Shown: positions 37,188 to 49,100 of the stretch, piece by piece
Position numbering within the stretch: position 1 is the first letter of the stretch
How the letters are laid out: the number at the start of each line of letters is the position of its first letter
Notes under the pieces: model-generated
Database searches by the model: none
Told to the model about the DNA's origin: nothing
Seen by the model: only the letters and a program-made list of their open reading frames with translations
Assembly: GCA_001179505.1 (NCBI GenBank)
Contig: CDMY01000182.1
Span: 1 to 64,000, forward strand
DNA from: Vitrella brassicaformis CCMP3155
Taxonomy: Eukaryota; Protista; Chromerida
Reading direction: 5' to 3'
DNA length: 64,000 nucleotides
Program-made: the position numbers and the translations under genes

Positions 37188-40100
37188 TCAATCGACATCT
37201 CCTCCGGCTCTGGTGACTTGCCCTGACCACACACACACACACAGACAGACAGACACACACACACACAGATACCGCCCGCTTTCTCGGCGTGCTCGGTACA
37301 GGATCCCTGTCTGCCTGTCTGGGCTCACCTGATCGCCCCCTCCTCTTTCTCTGTCGTCGGTGTCCTTGCCCGTATTGCCCTCCTGCTGCCGCTGCTGCTG
37401 CTGCTGCTGCTGGGTGGTCTCCGCAGCCGCCGGCCCCTGCTGCTGATTCTGCTGGTGGGTGGTCGCTGCAGCCGCCTGCGCCTGCTGCTGGTTCTGTGGT
37501 GCGGTGGTGTGTCCGTCCTTGGCCTCTGCGGGTGGGGCAGCATCGGCTTGGGGAGTGTCGCTCCAGGGTGTGATGATCACGACGCCTGGGAACTCGGGCG
37601 AGGTTTTTTCAGTCATCTGCAAACCTGCACACCGCACACACACACACACACACATTCAGAGAGAGAGAGAGATGGAATGAGTGAATGGGTGTGTGAAATC
37701 CTTCTTCCAACGACGAGGGTTCAGTCTGTACGCACCTACAACGCTCTTCGCGAAGTGGAAGCCGAGAGGATCGTCGAAAGGATGGCCTCTTGTCACTTCA
37801 CTAGCAGACAGCAGCCGCGAGCCGCCAACGCCTGGCACACCATGAGCACCAGCAGCAGCAAGACCAGCCATCAAAGCAGAAGACCCCGGCGCAGACGGCC
37901 GGGCTGCCTGGGCAGCAGGGCTGCCGGTTCTGGTGTTTGCTGCTGGACGGGTGGCTCCAGGGCTGCCCTGGGAGGGCGATGACGCTTGCGATGACGGCCT
38001 TGGTGGCCGTGAAGGGGGTCGGCTGGAGAGGGGAGCCGGAGGGGGTGGGGAGGGGGTGGGTGGGCGGCCGGGGCTCGATGGAACGGTCACAAAGGGAAGA
38101 GGCGACTGCGACGAACGGTCTGGGGAAACACATCCACACGCACAGGAGAGGAGACAAGAGAAGACATCCACGTGAGGAATCTCTCCGGTGTGAAGGGGTG
38201 GGTGCATCTGTGTGTGTGTGGCGTACCAATAATGTGTTGCTGCGCCCCGTATCTGTGCTGCTGCATCCCCCCCGGCATGGCCCTCCACTGCTGCCCCTGC
38301 TGCTGCGGTGAGCCGGCCAGCCCCCGGACCTGCTGCAGACACGCCAGGAAGTCCGGCGAGCCGTAAGAGGGATGCATGTACGGCGGCTGTGGGTGCGGCA
38401 CGTACGCAAACCTCCCACCTCCACCCACAGCAGCAGCCGCCGCAGCAGCAGCAGAGGCCGATGGCTGTGGCTGCGACCCACCCCCACCACCCCTCCCTCC
38501 TCCGTAGAGGTGCAGGGTGGGCGAGGAAGCGCGCGGGAGTGGGCATCGGACCGACTCTCCGGCCGGCAGGATGGGCCTGACCCGCCCCGCCGACGGCTGC
38601 GGGGATGTGCGCAGTTGCGGGAACATCGGGTGGATGGCCGGCTGCGTGTGGAGAGTGGCAAGCAGGTCCGACGCACCAGTAGTTGTGATAATGGGCGGGG
38701 GGTGTCTCCGGTGTGTGAGGGGCGATCCAAAGGCGATCTCAGAGTGCTGTGTCACCAGCCGCTGCTTCTTGACCACAGAACCGTCGGACTGCGGCGAGCG
38801 CTGCTGCTTGTCGGCCGATGGGCCGTTGGGCAGAGGCGCCAGGACGTCTGTGGCAGATCTCTTGGTCCCTCTCCGCTGTTCGAGGACACTGCTGGCCTCA
38901 CTCTCGCGCCGCATCTCGTCTGGCTGGCCTGCAAGGGACGGGGGAGGGGGCGAGGGACTCACCGCACGGAAGCTGTGCGCGTCTTGAGGGCGGCTGAACC
39001 TACCCCGCATCAGCTTCTCCACCAGCTCGAGGTGCGACGTCCCGTGGCCGGTACTCGCACCTCCGCCCGCCCTCTTGGATGTGTCGCCGATCGGATGCAT
39101 TTCGACGTCAGAGATGTGTGTCCGCTTGCCGTCCGGCTCCTGCTTGGTGGTGCCGTTGAGTGGTGGGATGGGGGCGGGCTCGAGGGAGAGGGTCCTCTTC
39201 TGTCGCGAGCAGTGGTCGCGGTCATACTCCTGGAAGTCATAGCACGCGAAGCGATCCATCGCCTGCCGCCACAGGGCCGATTGCTGAGGGAATCCAAGAC
39301 ACACAGTGATGATGTGATGTGATGATCGTATATAAATGGGTGGGTCCATCCCTCGTTCGTACCTGCTGGACGAGCCTCAACAGGGCCGCTCTCTCCTCGT
39401 TAGTGTCCTCCTCTTTCTTGTCGCCCTCGGTCTCCTCCTTGGGCTCCACCAGCCCCAGCTGACACATGCCCTTGGGCTCATTCTGACCCTCCGACGCCGC
39501 CCCCTCGGCCCCATTGCCCTGCTCCAGTTTCTTCTGCAGCTCGGCCACCAGGGGGTCTTCCTCCTCTTCGAGCGGCTGCTCGTCCTTGGGGGACTTCCTG
39601 GGCAGCGGCGGTGGTGGGAAGGGGTGCTTCTTGCGGTGCTCGTTGAGGTGGAAGTAGAAGGTGTTGAGGGCTTTGTCTTCGGTGCGGAGCTTCTTGATGC
39701 GGCCGGCGAGAAGGAACAGCTGGTTCGACGCCTTCTTGACCAAGTCACGCGCCCTGAATGAATGAATGCCGCGACAACGAAGACAAATGAGTTCATAAGC
39801 GTGTGATGTCGTCAAAGTGACTGACCGTGTTGTGTCTTCGGCGAGTTTCCGCAGCCCCTCGCTCTTGAGGTCAGGGAACTCTCGTCGGTGGTCGGGGTAG
39901 TTGATCACATGGCGACGGCCGTCGCGGAACTCGGGAATGCTTCCCCCGGCCGGCGGGTTGGCCCATGGGTTGTCGCGCCACTTGTCGTTCCACATGTGGT
40001 TGTGTGCACCCGAGCTGCCCGCCGCCCCTGCTCGCCGCGTGTCGACCTGCTTGAGCAGCGCATCGATGTTCTGGTACTGCTCGTCGCCCACACCGACACC

Positions 40101-43100
40101 GACACCCATGCCCTTGCTGCTGCGGCTCATCTGCACGCGCCTCAGCCGCTCCTCTGGCGACATCTGCCCGAGACTGACGCCCTTGCCCATGCCGCCGATT
40201 GGGATGCCATTGAAGTAGGGGTTGTCTTTGCCGAAGTGGGGGTGCCGCTGTGCGCTGGTGCTGTTGAAGCCGGCCCAGGGGTGAGCCCGTCTGCTGCGGG
40301 ATTCCGTCTTGTACTTCTTGCGCGTGAGGCCGTCGGTGGACTGGGAGGCCGAGATGCTGCCGCGATCGCTGAAGCCGGAGCTCGCCGATGAGTCTGACTC
40401 GACAGAGTCTGAGGAGACAGCGAGAGCACAGCAACAGCAGTTGTGTGGCTGGCATGAGGGGCTGTGTGACTGCGTGGGTCCGTGTGTGGCAGCTTACAGT
40501 CGGATGACTCTTCTCCCTGCGACTCCACCGACTCCTCTTCGGTGAATTCATCAGAGGAACGCGCAGCACGACGACCTAATGGGCACAAAACACCAACACA
40601 CATGGAAGAAGGAATTGATTGTCCCTCTGCTGCGAGCCCTCGCCTCACCTGCAGTTGTTCTCCGTGGCTGTCCCGCCTTCGCCGCTCTGGCACCCCCGCG
40701 GGCACCCCGGCCCCGCGCCCCTCGTCCTCCGGAAGCGGGTGTGCTCTCCCTCGCCACGGGTGGCGCCAGGCCCACACCAGGAGGCGGGATGAGTGCCCCT
40801 CTGCCTGCACCAGCCGTTGGAGGCAGAATGGAGGGAGCGGCCGCCTTGGTGGTGCGGACGCTCGCGTGAGTCGCACCTACACAAGGGCAACGCGTGATTG
40901 TGTGGGCATGCATGTGTTTGTTCGTCCCGTGTTGTGTTGTGTTGTGTCGCGTGTGTGCATACCTGCAGCATCGAGGACGAGTTTTGGGTTGAGGAGGTAG
41001 CTGTTCTGTCCGGGGAACCGTGCGTTGATCTGCTTGTCGGTGTAGTTGCTCTGGTGCAGCGCCGCCACGAGGTACGGCGCGGCGTACAGGCTCTCGAAAT
41101 CCATCCACAGGACCTCACGACCAGCTCGCTGACAAATGAACACACACACACACACACATACATTCAATCCGATTGGATGTGTGTGCTACGCTGCCCTGAG
41201 TGAGTGCCACTCACCCGTCGCAGGGGAAGGAGGTCGGTGCCGCCCTGCATGGCGTAGTACTTGACGACCTTTGATATCTGCGCGTTGCGGTGGCACCGCT
41301 CGCAGGTGCAGATGCGGTTGCAGTAGGGGCAGATCCATTGGCGGCTAGCACTGACACAAGCAGCGGTGGGAGGCACCCACACAGGGAGGGACAAATAAAC
41401 AAGTGACAGACAGCTGGTTGGTTGGTTGGTTGGTTGGCGCATTTGTGGCGTGTGTGTACTCACGTTTGTCCTCTGTTCTCAGAGTAGCCCCCGAAGTTGT
41501 GGTTGAGGCATTCGGAGCAGAACATCCGCCAGCAGTAGCACCCCGCCTGGGCAAGATTCGACGTGCCGCCATAGAACTAACATGATATCACACAGAGGGC
41601 AAAGCAACCACACGCACACACACACACACATAGATGAGATGCATAGGTGAACAGATGACCACCCTACCATCGCCCCTCGCTGATTCGTTGACCCACTCAC
41701 CTTGTCGAGGCTTGCAGTCTTCTGCATGAGTTTGTTGGTTGGCATGTTGGTATTGAGGAACCGGGAAACCCTCTCCTGGTGCGAAGGCGAATTGCGCTCC
41801 GGCAGCTCCCCGTAGCTGTACCCCATCGCCCTCCCCTGCCCTGGCGCCAAGCCATACTGATACGCCCTGGCCGGCGGGCTGCCCCTCCCCCCTCCAGCAG
41901 CTTTCTTCCTGTTCACCGCGTCGCCCGGCAGCCGCAAGCCGGTCGACGGCGACCCACCGCGCCCGCGCCCCTTGGGGCTGGCGAGAGGCGGCGGCAACGG
42001 GGCGTTCATCGACTCGGCTCGTGCTGTGCGGTCGGCGTGCACCTCGTAGTATCGGTTCTTGACGTGCTCGAGCGGGTCGTGCTGGGGCTTGGTCCATTGG
42101 GTGGCCTCGAACTCATCGAGGATGGCCTGCCGCTCGGCCTCGCTCATCCCAGGGACGTCTGGGCTGAGGATGGGCGGGGGGAGAGGGAGCAGCCGCTTGG
42201 GCGACGTGGGTGAGGTTTTGCGAGCGGGAGAGGGCGTGTGCGCCTTCTTGGGCGAGCCGGCAGTCTTCTTGGCGGGTGAGGGCGGCCCTGACGCCTTGGG
42301 GCTCCTACTTGACCTCCTCCGGCCGCCTCGCTTGGGGGGCGACCGCGGGGGCGGTGGGTGGGGCAGGAAAAGCGGCGGCTCCGTCTCCTCCACCTTGACC
42401 GACGGCTGCTCGTTTTCATCTTGCGCTGGCGCCTCTTCAACGTGTGCAGGTGGTTCCGCCCCAGCAGCAGCTTCAGCCGCCGCCGCAGCTGCTGCCTCTG
42501 GGGCAGGGGTAGCGGATGGCTTCATTTCAGCGTCAGGCGGACCAGCGGGCTTCTCGTCGGGCTCGGGGAGAGGGAGAGGGAGAGGCAGAGAGAGCTTCTC
42601 GTCCACCACCTCGGGAGGTATCGGCTGCTTCTCGATGTTGGCCTCGGGCTCAGCGGGGGGCTGATTCTCGTCGGCTTCTTCAGCTGCATCCATCCTGCTG
42701 TCTGTCTCAGAGGGCGCAGGCGGCTTTTCGTCGGGCGGGATGTCCTGTGGGGCAGCAGCAGGCGGCTCATCGGATGGGTTCTCCTCCATGGTCACGTCTG
42801 CATCAGCCGCAGGGTCCGCGGGAGTCTCTGCTGGAGGCTGTGGCTCGTCGGCTGCCTTGGGCTCTTCCTGTTCTGACTCCTTGTCCGCCCCCGTCTCATC
42901 CGTCGGCTCTCGTTGCTCTCCAACACCCTCCTGCTGTCGCTGGTCGCTGTCGTCGCCCACCTCAGCTGGCCTCTCCTCTTCTCTCCTGCTCTCACCGGCC
43001 TTGTCCTGTTCTTCCGGCTGTTGCTCTGGCGGCGGTCCAGCTGCGATCTTGTCATCGTCGATCGGAGCAACCTCACTCCTCTCGCCTATCTCGACATCCG

Positions 43101-46100
43101 GGGATTGGCCGGCAGCGGCAGCGGCAGCCGCTGCGATGGCCGTGCTCCCGTCCTGCTGCTGCTGTTGCTGGTCGGCATTCTTTTCACTGTCCCCCTCGCC
43201 CTCGTCTGCATGCACCACCTCCTCAGCAAGTTTGTCGGCCACAGCCTCGTCCGCTGCCTTCCCCCCCTCCTCTCTCGCTTGGTCGGTGGCGCCTTGCCCA
43301 GCCTCGCGCTCATCGGCATCGGCTGCAGCGGCCTCGGTCTGATCGGCCGGTCGCTGCTCGTCGGTGTCATCGAACGACGGCACGGGGGGAAGCGGAGGGA
43401 GAGGAGGATGAGGTCGGGGCGCCTCGTCTTGCGCATCAGGGGAGGGGGGCAATGGAGGGACAGCGGGGGGTGGGGGCGGCATGTCCGTATCGCCAGGAGG
43501 GTTGGCGTCGCCATCTGTCCGCTCAACCTCGTCCGTCTCCCTCATGGTGGCGTCAGCGCCTTCCTCCTCCTTCGCTGCCCCGGACGCATCACCCATCTCC
43601 TCATTCGTGTCCTCTGACTCAGCAGCCGCTGCCGCTGCTGCTGGTGCTTCTGAGGGACCCTGCTGGTCATGATCGCCATCATCCTTGTCGTCAGTGGCCA
43701 TGACCTCATCGCCATCGCCCTTGTCTGCCTCCGCAGCTCCCTCCTCCTCTCCCTCGCCTCCCACCACCGCCGCTGCTGCTGGTGCAGACGGTTCCTCTTG
43801 CTGAGCGGGCGGCATGGCCTCATCCTCAGGTGGTCTGGACGAGTGGGGGCTCTTGGCTTGTGGGGGATGGGCACGGCCGGGGGGAGGGGTGGGCGGCAGC
43901 GACCCGTCCTTGCGCTTGGAGCGGATGAGCAGGTCCTCATCGCTGTCGCCATCCTCGGCAGGAGGTGCCTCAGGCGGCTCGTCCTCTGCGGCCTCTGGTG
44001 CGAGCTTGGCCTTCTTCCGCGACTTGGTGTCTTTCTTGCCCTTCTTGGATGAAGTGGGGGGCTTCACCACGTCCTCCGCCGGCTTGTCGTCCTCTGGCGG
44101 CTTCTCGTCCTCCGCTGGCTTGTCTGCCGCGTCGGTGGGAGGCTGCTCGTCGGTGTCCTCTGCCTCTGCAGCGGCTTCGCCCTTTTTGGTCTTTCTGCGG
44201 CCACCCTTGGTCTTCGGCTTGGCCTTGGCCTTTGGTTTGGGTGCCGGGGTGGCGTCACTCTCGTACTTCCTTGACCGGAGCCTCCGGGAGCCCCTGCCGG
44301 TCGGGTGCTCCTCTTCCTTGTCCTCAGCGGGCTCAGATGGCTTGGCCTCACCCTCTGCCTCGGTGGCCACCTGCGCCTCGTCGGGGGCCGCCTGCTCCTC
44401 AGCGTCGGCCGCCTTCTTCTTGCGATTGGTTTGTCGGGCCTTCTTCTTGGGCGCTGCCTCAGCCGCAGAGGTGTCGGGGGCATCACTTGGAGGCTCCGCT
44501 TCTGCCCCTGCAGCCTTCTTGCCCTTCTCGGTCTTGCTCTTTGGAGCCGGTTGCGGTGGCTCAGACTCTGCCGCCTCTGCCGTGTCATCTTTGGTTTTTC
44601 TCCTGCCGCCCTTCTTGCCGCGTGTCTTGCCGCCCTCATCCTCCTCATCGGCAGCGCTCGCTGCGGCCGCTGCGGCCGCCGCGCCCTTCTTGGCCCGCGC
44701 CTTGGCCTTGGTCTTGGCTCCCGCCTTGGCTTTGGGCGCAGGTGCCTCGCTGGCCGGCTCGCTCGACGGAGGCTGGCCTCTCTTGCTGCGGCCAGTGGAG
44801 CGGCCCGACTGCTCGCCCTCCTGGGGATCATCTGCGTCGGGGGGTGGCGTGGGTGCTGCCTTGGCCTTCTTCTTCTTCGGCGGTGGCTTGGGGTCCTCCA
44901 CAGGGGGGTCATCAGGCTGCTGCTGCTGCTCATCAGCAGCAGGCTTGGCCTCTCCCGCAGCATCCGTGGCGCTCTCTTCAGGTTCCTCAGGTGCTGCACT
45001 GGTGTCCCGCTTCCGCTTGGTGCCCCTGCCGCCACGAGAGGCGCTGGATGCCCCTCGCCCCCTGCCGCCACGGGAACCCCCGCCTCTGCTCCTGCCCCTC
45101 TCAGCAGCTGCGGCCTCCTCGGCCTTGCGGCGAGCCCCACGAGTCTCCATGGGCTCAATCTTGATCTCGATCATGGCGCCCCGCTGACGGGGGGTGGATG
45201 ATGCGGCGCTCTGTGTCTTCCTCGGACGCCCGCCACGATTCTTGCCAGTGTTGCCTCTTCCCGCAGGGGCGGGCGGGTCCATCGCTGGCGGGTCGTCGTC
45301 CTGCTCGGCCGGCTCCTCTTTGACGACCGAATCCACCTGCATCGCGTCGCCGCCATCGCACTCCTTCTCCTCACCCCTCGACGCAGGATCGTCTGCTGCA
45401 GCTGGCGGGTCGGTCGCCACCTCAGTAGCAGCCGCGGGGGGAGGTGCGTCAGGTGCTTCGGAGGGGGGCAAGAGGCGAATAGACGGCACCGGGGCTGCGG
45501 GGGCCGCCTCTGGAGGAGAAACAAGTGGTGCGCCAGCTGCACTGCTCTCCTCTTGTTGCGGCTGCTGAGCCCAGGCCGTCACAGAACCTGAGTCGCGAGG
45601 GCCTGGCTCCTCCTCGACCTTGAGTGACACTTGCTGCATCTCAAGCAATGCCGGTGGCACGGAAGGAGGGGCCTTGATGGCCACCACCTCAGCAGCTGAC
45701 GGTGGCGGCTGCGCTGCATCTTGCTGCTGCTCCTCCTCCTCCTTGTGTTGACTGGCCTCCTTGTCGGTTGCCTCTCCCTTGGGTGAGAAGGAGGTGCTGC
45801 GGACGACGCCGACCGGCCCGACCTTTGCCTTTGGCTTTGGCGATGGGCTGATGGGGGCGGGAGGGGGAGGGGCCTTGGCCTGCAGGGGTAGCAGGGGCAC
45901 AGCGGGCGCCTGATGAGGGGTCGTCTTGGCAGCAGCGGCGCGGGTGGGCGTCTCTGGGACGACATCGTAGACGGGCGGCGGGGGCAGGTTCTCCCTCACC
46001 CGCTCGCTGTAGTCCTGCAGCACCTGAGTCTCGTCGGTCAAGCGGTTGATGTACTCGGGGTGGCGGCCGGGCGGCCCCGTGGCTGCAGATGATGCGATGC

Positions 46101-49100
46101 CGACGCCGCCCTGCCGCAGCTTGCTGAAGCACACCGACATGGCCCGCCTCTTGCCGTCCTCAGTCAGCTTGCATCGACAGTAGTGGCAGAACGGCCCACT
46201 GACCCTCGGGAAGCCCGCGTTGCCCGCCTTGGCCGTTGCCGCCGCCTTGGCTTTGTTCTTGGCCTTGGCCTTTGCCTTGGACTTGGGCGAAGCAACGCCA
46301 CTCACCACCGCAGCAGCCGCTGCCGCGGCCTGCTGCTGCTGTTGCTGTGACGCATCTGCCGTGGCTGCAGCAGCGGCCGCAGAGCTGGCGGATGCCGATC
46401 GCAGTGGTGGGGCGGGGAGAGAGGCCTCGGGAGGTAGGTTTAGCGGTGGGGGGAGGGCTTTGGGTGGGTTTCGGTTGGAGAAGATGTACTTGTCAATGGT
46501 GGCCGCACCATAGTATTTGGACTCAGTGTTGGGCACCCGCTCCCAAAGAAGGCGATAGAGGACGGCCTTGGGGACCCACTCGACGTGCACGTTGTCGCCG
46601 TCGTCAAACGACACCAAATACTCGCCGCGGCTCTTGTCAAAGGCCAGCAGCTCCTCGACAGAGTCACACAGCTGCTCAAAGGTCAAACGATCCACTATCT
46701 CTGCAGCCCACCAAATGAACGAACGAGAGCAACAGGGACAAATATGTGCCTCCATCCAGTGTTGTGGGGGGGTGGGGGGGTGGGTGTCGCGAGCGTACTC
46801 TTGAGCACGTCGAGGGTGACGGTGTTGCCCTCCCGTCTCTTCTTCCGCCTCTCCTCCTCCTCGCCCAGCCGGCTTGCGATCTCGGTCCTCAGGTGGGTCA
46901 GTGTGCGGTCGTTCTCCTCCAACATGCGGCGAAACTGGGGCAGCAGGCACTGAAGAAAAAACATGACGCGCACAGATCGAATCATCCATGAGCCAGCCCA
47001 TCTTCCGCTGCAAGCACGTACCTGTATCTCCTCCTCGTATGTGATGAAGTTGGCCTCCTTTTTCCTCCTGCCGCCCCCGCCGCCCCCGCCCCCGCCGCCG
47101 CCGCCGCCGCCCCCGCCGCCGCCGCCTGTGGAAGTGCCGCCTTCCTGTGATGGCGATGGTACGCTGGCGGCGGGCTGAGAGGGCGGGTCGTCGGATGCCT
47201 CCCGCTCCCTTAGGCTGCGATCCGGGCTGGGCAGGGCCTGTGGAGGGGTGGGCGGATTGCTCGCAGACAACTCACGCTGAGAGAGGAACACACAAATACG
47301 CGATGGATGGATGGATGCGCATAGAATGCGCCACGTTGGTGTGGGTGTGGGTGTGTGGAGCACTACCTGGTAGGTTTTGAAGTCCTCCTGTTGCCGCTGG
47401 TACTCCCGCATCTTCTCTCGCTCCCGCTGCTTGAACGACCGCTTGTCCGACCGCGGCTGCACAAACGCCTCACCCAAATCCATACCTGACACACACACAC
47501 ACACACCGAGCACACACGTCTCGGTCGACCACTAAGCGCCTGGGTGTCTGTCTGTCTGTCTGCCGTGGCTTACTCATGAACTCGGGGTCAGTGGTGTACT
47601 GCAGGCGGATAAGCTGCGCGTCGGTGAGCCCGCTCGCCTGGTTGGCCGACGCTGGCACGGGGGGCGTCTCGAACGCTGCGCCTGAAGCACACAAGCGGGC
47701 AAACATGTGTGAATGCCCTCCCTCTGTAAGTGTGTTCGCGTTGCCCTGACCGAGTTTCTTCTCCCGCATCTCGCGTATGGCGTCGAAGTCGATGAGATCG
47801 TCCAGCGCCCACTGCCATGAGTAGTGGGGGCCGGTGAACTGGCCCTTGAGCAGCGGCTCGGTGGCCGCACGCCCCGTGGCCTGCGACGCCTCGTGCGGCA
47901 CTATCGAGATGCCGTCAAGGCCGTCGATCTGCATGCTGGTGCTGCCGGCGTCGCTCCCGGCTGCTCCTGCTGCCGCTGCGGCGCTGCTGGATGGGGCCGG
48001 GGGAGGTTTCCTGTTGATAAAGGCGTCGGTCTGGTTGGTACGCTCCACGTATTTGGCCACGTGTGGCTCGATGTCGAGGAAGTCGAGCCACCGCTTGTCA
48101 AGCGGCCAGTGGTCACGCTCACTCAACTCCCAGAACTGATGGACGGACGGACGGACGCAGAAGTGAGAATGGTTGTCTGTGAGTGTGGAGTGGGTCGTCT
48201 GCGTGCCGTTCCGTACCTTCTCGGCAGTGTCTATTGTTTCGAGAGGCGGCGCAGGTGTGCCGAAGTCGGCGGGCGTCACATCGTCAGATCCCTGAATCAA
48301 CTTCTCACTGCAGATACACACATGGACACACATTTCGTGCTTCTCGCGTGTCCGGCTGGTCTCCCCCCCCCCCTCTCTCTCTCTCCATCCCAGCGGGCTT
48401 ACGTGAATTTGCGATTCTCGTTTTTGTCGAACGATGCTGTGACCTGCTGCCCCTTCTTGACCGCTCCCCTCCTGCCCCCGATCTTCTCCTTGCGCTTGAC
48501 GCCGCCCTTGGGCTGCGGCTGTACGTCATCGTCAGCACGCCTCACGGTGCCGTCCACCGATGGCGCGTTGGGGTACAGGAAGTCAAACAGATGCTGCACA
48601 CCTCCGCCCAAGCCCGTGCCGAAATTGCCCTGGCGGCCGACCCCACCCCCGCTGGCTCGGCCCTCCTTGGCCCGGTGCGGCCCCCCAGACTTGGCTCGGG
48701 GTGTTGTCTTGGTCCTGGGTGTGTGAGCCTTGGACCGGCTGCCGACCGGCGGAAATGTGCTCTTGGCGGCCGGGGGGCGCACCTTGACTGGCGGAGGGGG
48801 CGGGGGGGGAGGGTTGATGTACATGGCCGCCTCTTCCGCGGCCGACGCTGGTGGCGCAACTCCATTGCTGTCCTTTGGAGGTGGAGGAGGCAATGAAGGC
48901 ACCGAAGGCACGTCAGCAGGGAGAGGCGCCTCCGCTGCTGCTGCGGCATTGTCCTGCACGTGGTTGGGTAGGGGTGAGGGTGACGATGGGGCGCCACTCG
49001 GGTCAGAGTTGACGCAGGAGCGATTGGATGGGTCGACGTCACAGGGAGGAGGGGAGCAAGCGGCGGGAGCCTTCATCGGCACGTCAACGTCCTTGACTGC

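What the first reader, a model, noticed from the sequence alone, without database searches (positions are those of the whole stretch)
41290..46660. CDCA7-type zinc finger split by ~1,490 disordered residues, next to a chromo-like domain
Seen: PFCHYCRCK...MSVC (46129-46188) supplies the first three Cys of the zf-4CXXC_R1 pattern. The rest (CYCWRMFCSECL...RQWICPYCNRICTCERC) comes only after 4,428 nt of open acidic/Pro/Lys-rich frame plus 12 residues in the next exon. Together they reproduce the CDCA7 pattern CxxC..C..C..FCxxCL..WxCPxCxxxCxCxxC. A chromo-like segment lies ~120 codons upstream and an AT-hook-like RGGRPRK lies within the insert. Established: the CDCA7 finger recognises hemimethylated CpG and activates HELLS; related fingers occur in plant KDM3 demethylases. 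Inference: a giant loop inserted in a folded reader domain, in a chromatin reader not known to me from alveolates.
Basis: partly seen in the sequence, partly recalled or inferred. Interest (0 to 1): 0.72.

Follow-up and report, generated by a model that had tools for sequence, protein, structure and literature searches.

The report
Zinc finger split by giant loop
In the alga Vitrella brassicaformis, one gene and one mRNA encode a CDCA7-type (zf-4CXXC_R1) zinc finger whose first four metal ligands lie about 1,490 disordered residues before the other eight; Cryptosporidium relatives show the same split with shorter loops, so it looks like an extreme natural loop expansion, though the fold is untested.

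Summary
On the minus strand, a 5,000-nt exon (41701-46700) encodes a chromo-like module, then PFCHYCR..MSVC (46129-46188), then 1,476 residues of disordered sequence. Two small exons (41464-41576, 41215-41350) carry CWRMFCSEC...CPYCNRICTCERC. Spliced RNA contigs from two studies join all of this in frame, and no intron removes the insert.

The gene is Vitrella brassicaformis CEL93640. Funabiki et al. 2023 already list it as "Other zf-4CXXC_R1", but they aligned it without its first three cysteines.

New here:
- Orthologs in at least ten Cryptosporidium species and one transcriptome protein share the same order of conserved blocks.
- Their Cys3-Cys4 gaps are 121-460 residues, against 1,490 in Vitrella.
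- The invariant upstream residues (Cys, His, Cys, Arg, Cys) are exactly the four ligands the downstream eight cysteines lack to build CDCA7's three cross-braced zinc sites.
- The insert lies in the loop that is already variable in fungi and ciliates.

It is not a CDCA7 ortholog. ICF residues G294 and R304 are not conserved, and HELLS is not detected in Vitrella.

Physical reassembly of the halves is inferred, not shown. The AlphaFold model of an ortholog was too poor, and the upstream half alone gives no significant match. The joined-sequence search was left out by rule.

Verdict: a new variant of a known kind, of moderate interest.

The parts
48070..48138 (-). Conserved N-terminal block QFWELSERDHWPLDKRWLDFLDI of the same gene
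   Evidence: tblastn with the C. muris, C. felis and GHVP01012585 orthologs (52-57% identity, E down to 4e-4), in the same order as the other blocks. The exon limits here were not checked with reads.
47767..47832 (-). Second conserved N-terminal block (GPHYSWQWALDDLIDFDAI)
   Evidence: Weak tblastn match to Cryptosporidium orthologs, in the same order as the other blocks.
46799..46949 (-). Exon of 151 nt (coiled-coil-like, Arg/Glu-rich) directly upstream of the large exon
   Evidence: Junctions 46949/47022 and 46700/46799 in the spliced RNA contig X4 record 17; GT..AG ends read.
41701..46700 (-). Single 5,000-nt exon: chromo-like module, upstream finger half and the disordered insert
   Evidence: Matches X4 record 17 without a gap or mismatch. 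RNA contigs from X6 also lie inside it. The frame is open for 1,666 codons. No Pfam family matches the 1,400 residues after the upstream half.
46543..46680 (-). Chromo/Tudor-like module (helix, three strands, helix)
   Evidence: phmmer found the orthologs through this module (E 2.8e-5 to 8.5e-4 in 1.84 billion proteins). Fourteen columns are invariant in A2. The AlphaFold model has pLDDT 88-93 over residues 10-50. The best structural neighbours are chromoshadow, Tudor and chromo domains, but only at Z 3.2-4.3. Pfam gives only sub-threshold Tudor hits.
46129..46188 (-). Upstream finger half: Cys1-His-x-Cys2-Arg ... Cys3 (CHYCRCKLTEDGKRRAMSVC)
   Evidence: P, C, H, Y, C, R, S and C are invariant across Vitrella, Cryptosporidium and GHVP01012585 (A3). 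It is the top hit in the window for a profile built from orthologs only (E 1.6e-3). It matches the CH-x-C-R signature, which supplies two Zn1 ligands and the Zn2 histidine in CDCA7; the third Cys is a Zn3 ligand (PMC11343032).
41541..46128 (-). Insert between Cys3 and Cys4: 1,476 codons of the large exon plus the first 12 codons of exon 2 (the 124-nt intron 41577-41700 is spliced out)
   Evidence: Composition and charge blocks are: basic at residues 500-900, with an RGG box and Lys/Ala tracts like a histone H1 tail, and acidic at 900-1400. Only short microrepeats are present. No Pfam hit. No credible splice joint lies inside it.
45217..45237 (-). AT-hook-like RGGRPRK, the only GRP core in the exon
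   Evidence: Pattern search. Pattern match only; not tested with a profile.
41464..41576 (-). Exon 2: Cys4-Trp, Cys5-x-x-Cys6 (CWRMFCSECLNHNF)
   Evidence: Junctions in RNA contigs of X4 and X6. A profile built from orthologs gives E 4.2e-6. Aligns with CWRMYCSEC of Cryptosporidium.
41215..41350 (-). Exon 3: Cys7-x-x-Cys8-x3-Cys9-x-Cys10-x-x-Cys11 plus the start of the C-terminal helix
   Evidence: On its own it matches PF10497 at E 9.5e-5, 22.9 bits against a cut-off of 22.7, profile positions 54-79 of 99. A profile built from orthologs gives E 4.2e-11. Junctions are seen in X4 and X6.
40963..41128 (-). Probable exon 4 (RAGREVLWMDFESLY...), continuing the domain's C-terminal part
   Evidence: GT..AG ends and frame read. 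GREVLW.DF aligns with GREI[TS]W..F of the orthologs. Not covered by the stretch laid with reads, so the limits are inferred.

Best explanation
This is the Vitrella brassicaformis gene for CEL93640. It belongs to a family shared with Cryptosporidium and one other protist transcriptome. Family members carry, in order, conserved N-terminal blocks, a small chromo/Tudor-like module and a zf-4CXXC_R1 zinc finger.

[quoted passage not shown] In CDCA7 that loop is four residues long, and both cysteines bind the same zinc (Zn3). The two ends of the insert therefore lie side by side in the fold, and a disordered segment of any length can bulge out without breaking it.

Most likely the upstream piece (Cys1, His, Cys2, Cys3) and the downstream piece (Cys4 to Cys11) come together in the same molecule to form the three cross-braced zinc sites. 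The insert is a block-charged disordered tail. Its basic part is Lys/Ala-, RGG- and AT-hook-like, and its acidic part follows. This would add unspecific nucleic-acid or histone contacts.

The likely role is a chromatin-binding scaffold or reader, not a hemimethylated-CpG sensor for HELLS.

Shown: one exon chain, one mRNA, an open frame, orthology of every block and the position of the insert. Inferred: zinc binding, reassembly of the halves and any chromatin role.
For: - **One mRNA.** Spliced contigs from two studies agree, and the 5-kb exon is uninterrupted.
- **Same gene as the literature.** The window translation matches the CEL93640 text in the supplement of PMC10538959, including the splice joins.
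- **Orthologs.** They were found with the chromo-like module alone. All of them carry P[FL]CHYCR..C[PF]SK, an insert, and then CWRM[FY]CSEC..CP[FY]C..C.CERC.
- **Ligand count.** The invariant upstream residues are Cys, His, Cys, Arg and Cys (A3). In mouse CDCA7, Zn1 is bound by C1xxC2 plus C5xxC6, Zn2 by the His after C1 plus C9/C10/C11, and Zn3 by C3/C4 plus C7/C8 (PMC11343032). The downstream eight Cys therefore leave every site incomplete, and the upstream four ligands complete all three.
- **No alternative ligands.** The Vitrella insert contains a single Cys.
- **A known variable site.** The Cys3-Cys4 spacing varies in fungal CDCA7F. The ciliate proteins that group with CEL93640 in that paper's tree carry inserts of roughly 50-115 residues there.
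- **Family link.** The downstream-half profile has the three CDCA7 chains as its best PDB hits (E 0.005-0.06), aligning Cys4-Trp through Cys11. Exon 3 alone reaches the Pfam cut-off.
- **Selection on the frame.** A 1,476-codon open frame that then splices in frame to the second half implies selection for translating through.
Against: - **The upstream half is not significant alone.** Pfam gives no hit. A profile of it does not retrieve CDCA7 from the PDB; its nearest matches are unrelated, such as the ribosomal protein S4 zinc knuckle.
- **No structural test.** The AlphaFold model of the C. muris domain, which has the shortest insert, had mean pLDDT 43 and no structural match.
- **Extra cysteines.** Most orthologs have a fourth, non-aligned Cys in the upstream piece, so a small independent knuckle cannot be fully excluded.
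- **Another Cys motif in Cryptosporidium.** Its inserts hold a conserved CN[IV]C motif of their own, about 27 residues before Cys4, which could substitute there.
- **DNA-contact residues are not kept.** R304/R315, R344 and Q275 of CDCA7 are replaced, so the binding target is unknown.
- **Limits of contigs.** They cannot exclude a rare isoform.
Confidence: 0.7

Rival explanations
1. There are two unrelated zinc modules. CHYCR..C is a small independent zinc knuckle attached to the chromo-like module. The downstream part is an N-terminally truncated, degenerate zf-4CXXC_R1 that works with fewer zinc ions or uses other ligands.
For: The upstream profile finds generic zinc knuckles, not CDCA7. Vitrella, most Cryptosporidium species and GHVP01012585 have a fourth Cys near the motif. 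Funabiki et al. aligned CEL93640 without the upstream half.
Against: The extra Cys is not at an aligned position, and it is absent from the C. muris group, which has three Cys plus His. The invariant set is exactly the ligand set of the first half of CDCA7, including the His next to Cys1. That His points away from Zn1 in CDCA7 and cannot share a site with its neighbour. Eight conserved downstream Cys would leave three incomplete sites. The ciliate relatives have the same CH-x-C..C piece, which was aligned as part of the domain.
Confidence: 0.12
2. The finger is a relic in Vitrella. The halves are homologous to one domain, but after the huge expansion they no longer assemble, and the protein works through its disordered region and chromo-like module only.
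For: No structural evidence of assembly. The insert is three to twelve times longer than in any relative found.
Against: All twelve ligands, the Arg after Cys2 and the Trp after Cys4 are intact in Vitrella, despite deep divergence from Cryptosporidium (29-36% identity in these pieces). The frame is kept open over 4.4 kb and through two splices into the second half. A relic would be expected to lose ligands or the frame.
Confidence: 0.08
3. A minor isoform removes the insert through an intron within the exon (exitron), and that isoform carries the working finger. The long form would be a precursor or a separate product.
For: Contigs drop rare variants, so absence cannot be shown.
Against: No joint with canonical ends lies inside the exon. 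The joints reported there have 21-letter sides or also occur in the DNA runs. They sit on CTG/CTC low-complexity tracts and come from contigs of other loci. Orthologs also keep long inserts, and one of them comes from a transcriptome assembly.
Confidence: 0.05

Closest known systems
CDCA7 zf-4CXXC_R1 / HMZF domain (human, mouse; PDB 8TLE, 8YV8; Pfam PF10497)
   Same: Same order of ligands: C-H-x-C-R, C, C-W, C-x-x-C, C-P-x-C, C-x-C-x-x-C. CDCA7 chains are the best PDB hits of the family's downstream profile. Exon 3 reaches the Pfam cut-off. The Arg after Cys2, which reads the CpG in CDCA7, is kept.
   Different: The Cys3-Cys4 loop is 1,490 residues instead of 4. Three residues are deleted between Cys4 and Cys5, which removes G294. 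R304 is Asn, Q275 is Cys, and the Arg after Cys11 is His. No HELLS or CDCA7 class I protein is listed for Vitrella. The protein is also far longer, with a chromo-like module.
Ciliate 'other zf-4CXXC_R1' proteins (Paramecium XP_001427761, XP_001443245; Stylonychia CDW86779) in Funabiki et al. 2023
   Same: They group with CEL93640 in that paper's tree. They have the CH-x-C..C piece, an insert between Cys3 and Cys4, and four residues between Cys4 and Cys5.
   Different: Their inserts are only roughly 50-115 residues by my count from the printed alignment. Whether they have a chromo-like module was not checked here.
Cryptosporidium 'large with possible RING domain' / 'RING domain-containing' proteins (e.g. 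C. muris CMU_037740, XP_002139058)
   Same: Orthologs: the same conserved blocks occur in the same order along the whole N-terminal half, and the finger is split at the same place.
   Different: Their inserts are 121-173 residues and hold conserved motifs of their own (YYSRSL[IV]PW, CN[IV]C). Their C-terminal halves show no detectable similarity to Vitrella. Pfam finds no RING domain, only sub-threshold PF10497.
Chromo domain plus class II zf-4CXXC_R1 proteins (Acanthamoeba XP_004340890, Taphrina CCG81269) and fungal CDCA7F
   Same: A royal-family-type module is combined with a zf-4CXXC_R1 finger. CDCA7F has variable Cys3-Cys4 spacing (PMC10538959).
   Different: Those carry a recognisable CHROMO domain and a compact finger. 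Here the module fails every Pfam chromo and Tudor cut-off, and the finger is split by a very long insert. No direct sequence comparison was made here.

Membership tests
zf-4CXXC_R1 (Pfam PF10497) | Score at or above the Pfam gathering cut-off | tested here: met
   Exon 3 alone scores 22.9 bits against a cut-off of 22.7, E 9.5e-5, profile positions 54-79 of 99. This is marginal and covers the last third only. Exon 2 and the upstream half alone give no hit. The joined sequence was not searched, by rule.
zf-4CXXC_R1 (Pfam PF10497) | Eleven cysteines and one histidine in the canonical order | tested here: met
   C171, H172, C174 and C190 of the large exon, plus eight Cys in exons 2 and 3. All are invariant in orthologs. 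The order agrees with the ligand list of PMC11343032.
zf-4CXXC_R1 (Pfam PF10497) | Compact domain of about 100 residues with short Cys3-Cys4 spacing | tested here: not met
   1,490 residues lie between Cys3 and Cys4. The spacing is known to vary in fungi and ciliates, but by far less.
zf-4CXXC_R1 (Pfam PF10497) | Cross-braced three-zinc fold | tested here: inconclusive
   The AlphaFold model of C. muris residues 453-708 had mean pLDDT 43 and pTM 0.24, and Foldseek found nothing. The Vitrella domain exceeds the 1,200-residue limit.
CDCA7 orthologs (class I zf-4CXXC_R1, Funabiki et al. 2023) | Three ICF-associated residues conserved (human R274, G294, R304) | tested here: not met
   R274 is kept (CHYCR). 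G294 falls in a three-residue deletion between Cys4 and Cys5 (alignment). R304 corresponds to Asn in CSECLNHNF.
CDCA7 orthologs (class I zf-4CXXC_R1, Funabiki et al. 2023) | HELLS/DDM1 partner and a maintenance DNA methyltransferase in the same genome | not tested
   Taken from the literature only. The table in PMC10538959 lists HELLS, DNMT1, DNMT5 and UHRF1 as not detected in Vitrella, with DNMT4-like CEM15752 and DNMT2 present.
Chromodomain / Tudor (royal family) | Profile match above cut-off | tested here: not met
   The best hit is PTM_DIR17_Tudor at 14.7 bits against 27.2. There is no chromo hit in Vitrella or in any of 11 orthologs.
Chromodomain / Tudor (royal family) | Three-stranded sheet packed by a C-terminal helix, similar to solved members | tested here: inconclusive
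   The model has strands 14-21, 26-32 and 37-43 and helix 44-52 at pLDDT about 90. The top structural rows are chromoshadow, Tudor, PWWP and chromo domains, but Z is only 3.2-4.3, within the background range the tool states. Foldseek gave no hit.
AT-hook | Gly-Arg-Pro core flanked by basic residues | tested here: met
   KNRGGRPRKT is the only GRP in the exon. This is a pattern match only, with no binding evidence.
RING finger (as the Cryptosporidium orthologs are annotated) | Match to a RING profile | tested here: not met
   A Pfam scan of four orthologs lists no RING family up to E 1. PF10497 is the only zinc-finger family found.

The most novel reading that the evidence does not exclude
The halves may not pair within one molecule but between molecules. 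The 1,490-residue block-charged linker would let the upstream half of one chain complete the zinc sites of another. That would give zinc-dependent chains or networks of a chromatin protein, a polymerising split zinc finger. Alternatively, loop closure could be regulated, so the finger exists only when zinc or a partner brings the halves together.
Probability: 0.07. Interest if true: 0.8.

Novelty: new variant of a known kind. Interest (0 to 1): 0.5.

Why it matters
- **It completes a published domain.** CEL93640 was aligned in print with its first three cysteines missing. The alveolate 'other zf-4CXXC_R1' proteins may be full three-zinc fingers once the distant piece is counted.
- **It extends the family into parasites.** Cryptosporidium was not in the 180-species panel of the co-evolution study. 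No paper in the library I could search names it together with zf-4CXXC_R1. A full ligand set there would mean this finger type is not tied to HELLS and 5-methylcytosine maintenance.
- **It is a natural test of insertion tolerance.** The series 4, about 55, 121-173, 460 and 1,490 residues lies between two ligands of one zinc ion in a cross-braced fold. This bears on domain-insertion design and on how profile searches miss split domains.
- **Cryptosporidium parvum can be genetically modified,** so the family's function can be tested there.

Tried and rejected
- **Word-index protein searches.** Two searches with the Vitrella exon found nothing, not even the protein itself. In the first search low-complexity words filled the candidate list. 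The full protein also probably exceeds the length window (I estimate over 3,000 residues, not measured).
- **Third word-index search.** With C. felis as query it found only Cryptosporidium. Absence from Chromera, Toxoplasma, Plasmodium or dinoflagellates is therefore not established.
- **Upstream-half profile A3 against PDB sequences.** CDCA7 was not retrieved.
- **Whole-domain profile A1, insert included, against PDB.** Only spurious hits.
- **AlphaFold of C. muris 453-708 with a 14-row alignment.** pLDDT 43, and Foldseek on it gave nothing.
- **Foldseek on the chromo-like model.** Nothing.
- **Pfam on the last 200 residues of the insert, on probable exon 4 and on the 317-codon downstream frame.** Nothing.
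- **Exitron reading.** Rejected on present data. The joints at 41941/43628 and 43648/46258 have 21-letter sides. The 43170/45722 joint occurs in DNA runs too and lies on CTG/CTC tracts.
- **Large tandem-repeat origin of the insert.** Rejected: only 18-24-nt microrepeats are present.
- **Organism of GHVP01012585.** Not identified.
- **Left out by the operators' rule.** The two halves, and exons 2+3, were not searched or folded as one joined sequence.

Full report
**Anatomy**

The feature lies on the minus strand. Translating 41479-47013 gives an open frame of 1,844 codons. Its last part is read-through into an intron.

Reading the DNA gives these GT..AG junctions:
- ...ASLDK|gtgagt at 41701/41700;
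- ttag|TTCTATGGC at 41577/41576;
- CAAAC|gtgagt at 41464/41463;
- gtcag|TGCTAGC at 41351/41350;
- CGACGG|gtgagt at 41215/41214.

The large exon runs from 46700 to 41701 (5,000 nt). Its 1,666 in-frame codons hold only six cysteines, at residues 11, 171, 174, 176, 190 and 447. From there, 1,476 codons lead to the end of the exon.

Exon 2 (41464-41576) reads FYGGTSNLAQAGCYCWRMFCSECLNHNFGGYSENRGQ. Exon 3 (41215-41350) reads ASRQWICPYCNRICTCERCHRNAQISKVVKYYAMQGGTDLLPLRR. Exon lengths keep one frame throughout.

**Expression**

Of the four public runs laid on 41150-47100, two behave as DNA (X1 and X3, with unspliced contigs). Two behave as RNA (X4 and X6, from different studies).

An 8,023-nt contig of X4 joins 41215-41350, 41464-41576, 41701-46700, 46799-46949 and 47022-47058. 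The 5,000-nt exon has no mismatch and no gap. A contig of X6 shows the first two junctions, and other X6 contigs lie inside the insert.

The other joints reported inside the exon are not isoforms. They have 21-letter sides or also occur in the DNA runs. They sit on CTG/CTC tracts and belong to long contigs of other loci. Both halves are therefore in one mature mRNA. Contigs cannot exclude a rare isoform.

**Identity**

The supplement of Funabiki et al. 2023 (PMC10538959) prints the finger of Vitrella CEL93640 as NTNMPTNKLMQKTASLDKFYGGTSNLAQAGCYCWRMFCSECLNHNFGGYSENRGQTASRQWICPYCNRICTCERC... This is exactly the end of the large exon followed by exons 2 and 3.

That paper files CEL93640 under 'Other zf-4CXXC_R1'. 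For Vitrella it lists no CDCA7, no class II finger, no HELLS, no DNMT1 or DNMT5 and no UHRF1. It lists only a DNMT4-like protein and DNMT2. Their alignment row has no cysteine before Cys4, so the upstream half was not recognised.

**Family membership of the downstream half**

- Exon 3 alone matches PF10497 at 22.9 bits, against a cut-off of 22.7.
- A profile of the downstream half, built from orthologs plus the two Vitrella exons, has the three CDCA7 chains as its best hits among 177,635 PDB sequences (E 0.005-0.06).
- The alignment runs from Cys4-Trp to Cys11.

**Orthologs**

phmmer with the 81-residue chromo-like segment, searched against 1.84 billion representatives, gave four true hits. 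Three are Cryptosporidium proteins (C. muris CMU_037740, C. felis, C. bovis). The fourth is a transcriptome protein held in EukProt (GHVP01012585), whose organism I could not identify. A further search added six more Cryptosporidium species.

Every one of these proteins has the same blocks in the same order:
1. QFWE..ER..P.D[EK]RW;
2. the chromo-like segment;
3. P[FL]CHYCR...C[PF]SK;
4. an insert;
5. CWRM[FY]CSEC..HNF...CP[FY]C...C.CERC and GRE[IV].W..F.

All of these blocks map to the Vitrella exons in that order.

The number of residues between Cys3 and Cys4 is:

| Organism | Residues between Cys3 and Cys4 |
|---|---|
| C. muris group | 121 |
| Other Cryptosporidium | 147-173 |
| GHVP01012585 | 460 |
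| Vitrella | 1,490 |

Profiles built without Vitrella recover each Vitrella block as the top hit among all six-frame segments of the window:

| Block | E-value |
|---|---|
| Chromo-like module | 2.7e-15 |
| Exon 3 | 4.2e-11 |
| Exon 2 | 4.2e-6 |
| Upstream half | 1.6e-3 (next best 0.12) |

**Why the upstream piece is most likely the first part of the same finger**

In mouse CDCA7 the domain binds three zinc ions in a cross-braced way (PMC11343032):
- Zn1 is bound by C1xxC2 and C5xxC6.
- Zn2 is bound by the histidine right after C1, with C9, C10 and C11.
- Zn3 is bound by C3 and C4, with C7 and C8.

The downstream eight cysteines alone would leave all three sites incomplete.

Across Vitrella, Cryptosporidium and GHVP01012585, the invariant residues of the upstream piece are Pro, Cys, His, Tyr, Cys, Arg, Ser and Cys. 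These include exactly the four missing ligands, plus the arginine that contacts the CpG in CDCA7. The extra cysteines near the motif are not at aligned positions and are absent from the C. muris group.

The insert lies between C3 and C4, the two neighbouring ligands of Zn3. Its ends must therefore meet in the fold. This is also the place where spacing varies in fungal CDCA7F. The ciliate proteins that group with CEL93640 carry inserts of roughly 50-115 residues there (my count from the printed alignment).

**What remains untested**

- The upstream half is too short for a significant match. Pfam gives nothing, and its profile does not find CDCA7 in the PDB.
- The AlphaFold model of the C. muris domain was of low confidence (pLDDT 43) and gave no structural match.
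- The Vitrella domain is longer than the folding limit.
- Reassembly of the halves is therefore an inference from ligand counting, conservation and comparative position.

**Not a CDCA7 ortholog**

- Between Cys4 and Cys5 the family has four residues (WRM[FY]) against seven in CDCA7, which removes G294.
- The position of R304 is Asn.
- Q275 is Cys in Vitrella and Arg in the orthologs.
- The Arg after Cys11 is His or Leu.
- According to the published table, HELLS was not detected in Vitrella.

Reading hemimethylated CpG for HELLS is therefore unlikely. The target of the finger is unknown.

**The upstream module**

With a 12-row alignment, AlphaFold gives pLDDT 88-93 for a short helix, three strands and a C-terminal helix. 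The nearest solved structures are chromoshadow, Tudor, PWWP and chromo domains, but at Z 3.2-4.3. The tool itself rates that range as background. Pfam gives only sub-threshold Tudor hits. 'Chromo-like' is a fair description of the shape, not a family assignment.

**The insert**

- It has no Pfam match and only short microrepeats.
- It is a block polyampholyte. Residues 500-900 are basic, with an RGG box, Lys/Ala tracts like histone H1 tails, KRKR/KKKK runs and one GRP core (RGGRPRK at 45217-45237). Residues 900-1400 are strongly acidic.
- The last 170 residues are more hydrophobic and could hold a small structured element. This was not tested.

**Verdict**

The claims of novelty in alveolates and of a CDCA7/HELLS role are not supported.

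What is new:
- the upstream half of CEL93640 has been located;
- an orthologous family exists in Cryptosporidium with the same split;
- the Vitrella loop is extreme in size.

I rate it a new variant of a known kind.

Noticed in passing
P0001-P0014 (alignment A1), inside the Cryptosporidium inserts: Cryptosporidium orthologs keep two conserved motifs inside their 121-173-residue insert: YYSRSL[IV]PW, and [ST]H[VI]C[NS][IV]C..FE about 27 residues before Cys4. Neither occurs in Vitrella or GHVP01012585. They may form an extra zinc knuckle or a lineage-specific ligand swap.
   Followed up: partly
window 48070-48138 and 47767-47832, minus strand: Two N-terminal blocks (QFWE..ER..P.D[EK]RW and G.H[FY]..[RQ]WAL.DL.D) are shared by Vitrella, Cryptosporidium and GHVP01012585. 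No Pfam family was listed for them in the scan of the orthologs. This looks like an undescribed conserved module of the family.
   Followed up: partly
window about 47070-47150, minus strand: A (GGC)n tract encodes about 25 glycines in the exon upstream of the finding. The RNA contig of run X4 ends close to it, probably an assembly break.
   Followed up: no
window 43139-43170 and 45722-45750: CTG/CTC tracts (poly-Gln and poly-Glu on the coding strand) attract short matches from long contigs of other loci in both DNA and RNA runs. This produces false 'joints' in the read-laying output.
   Followed up: yes
window 41351-41463, 41577-41700, 41129-41214 (introns, minus strand): The short introns carry (TG)n/(CA)n and CCAA-type microsatellites just inside the splice sites.
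   Followed up: no
window 38087-41128, minus strand: The gene appears to continue for several more exons. The RNA contig has 2,569 nt beyond exon 3. These include an Arg/Gly-rich stretch and a 317-codon open frame (39237-40190) with no Pfam match and no detectable similarity to the orthologs' C-terminal halves.
   Followed up: partly
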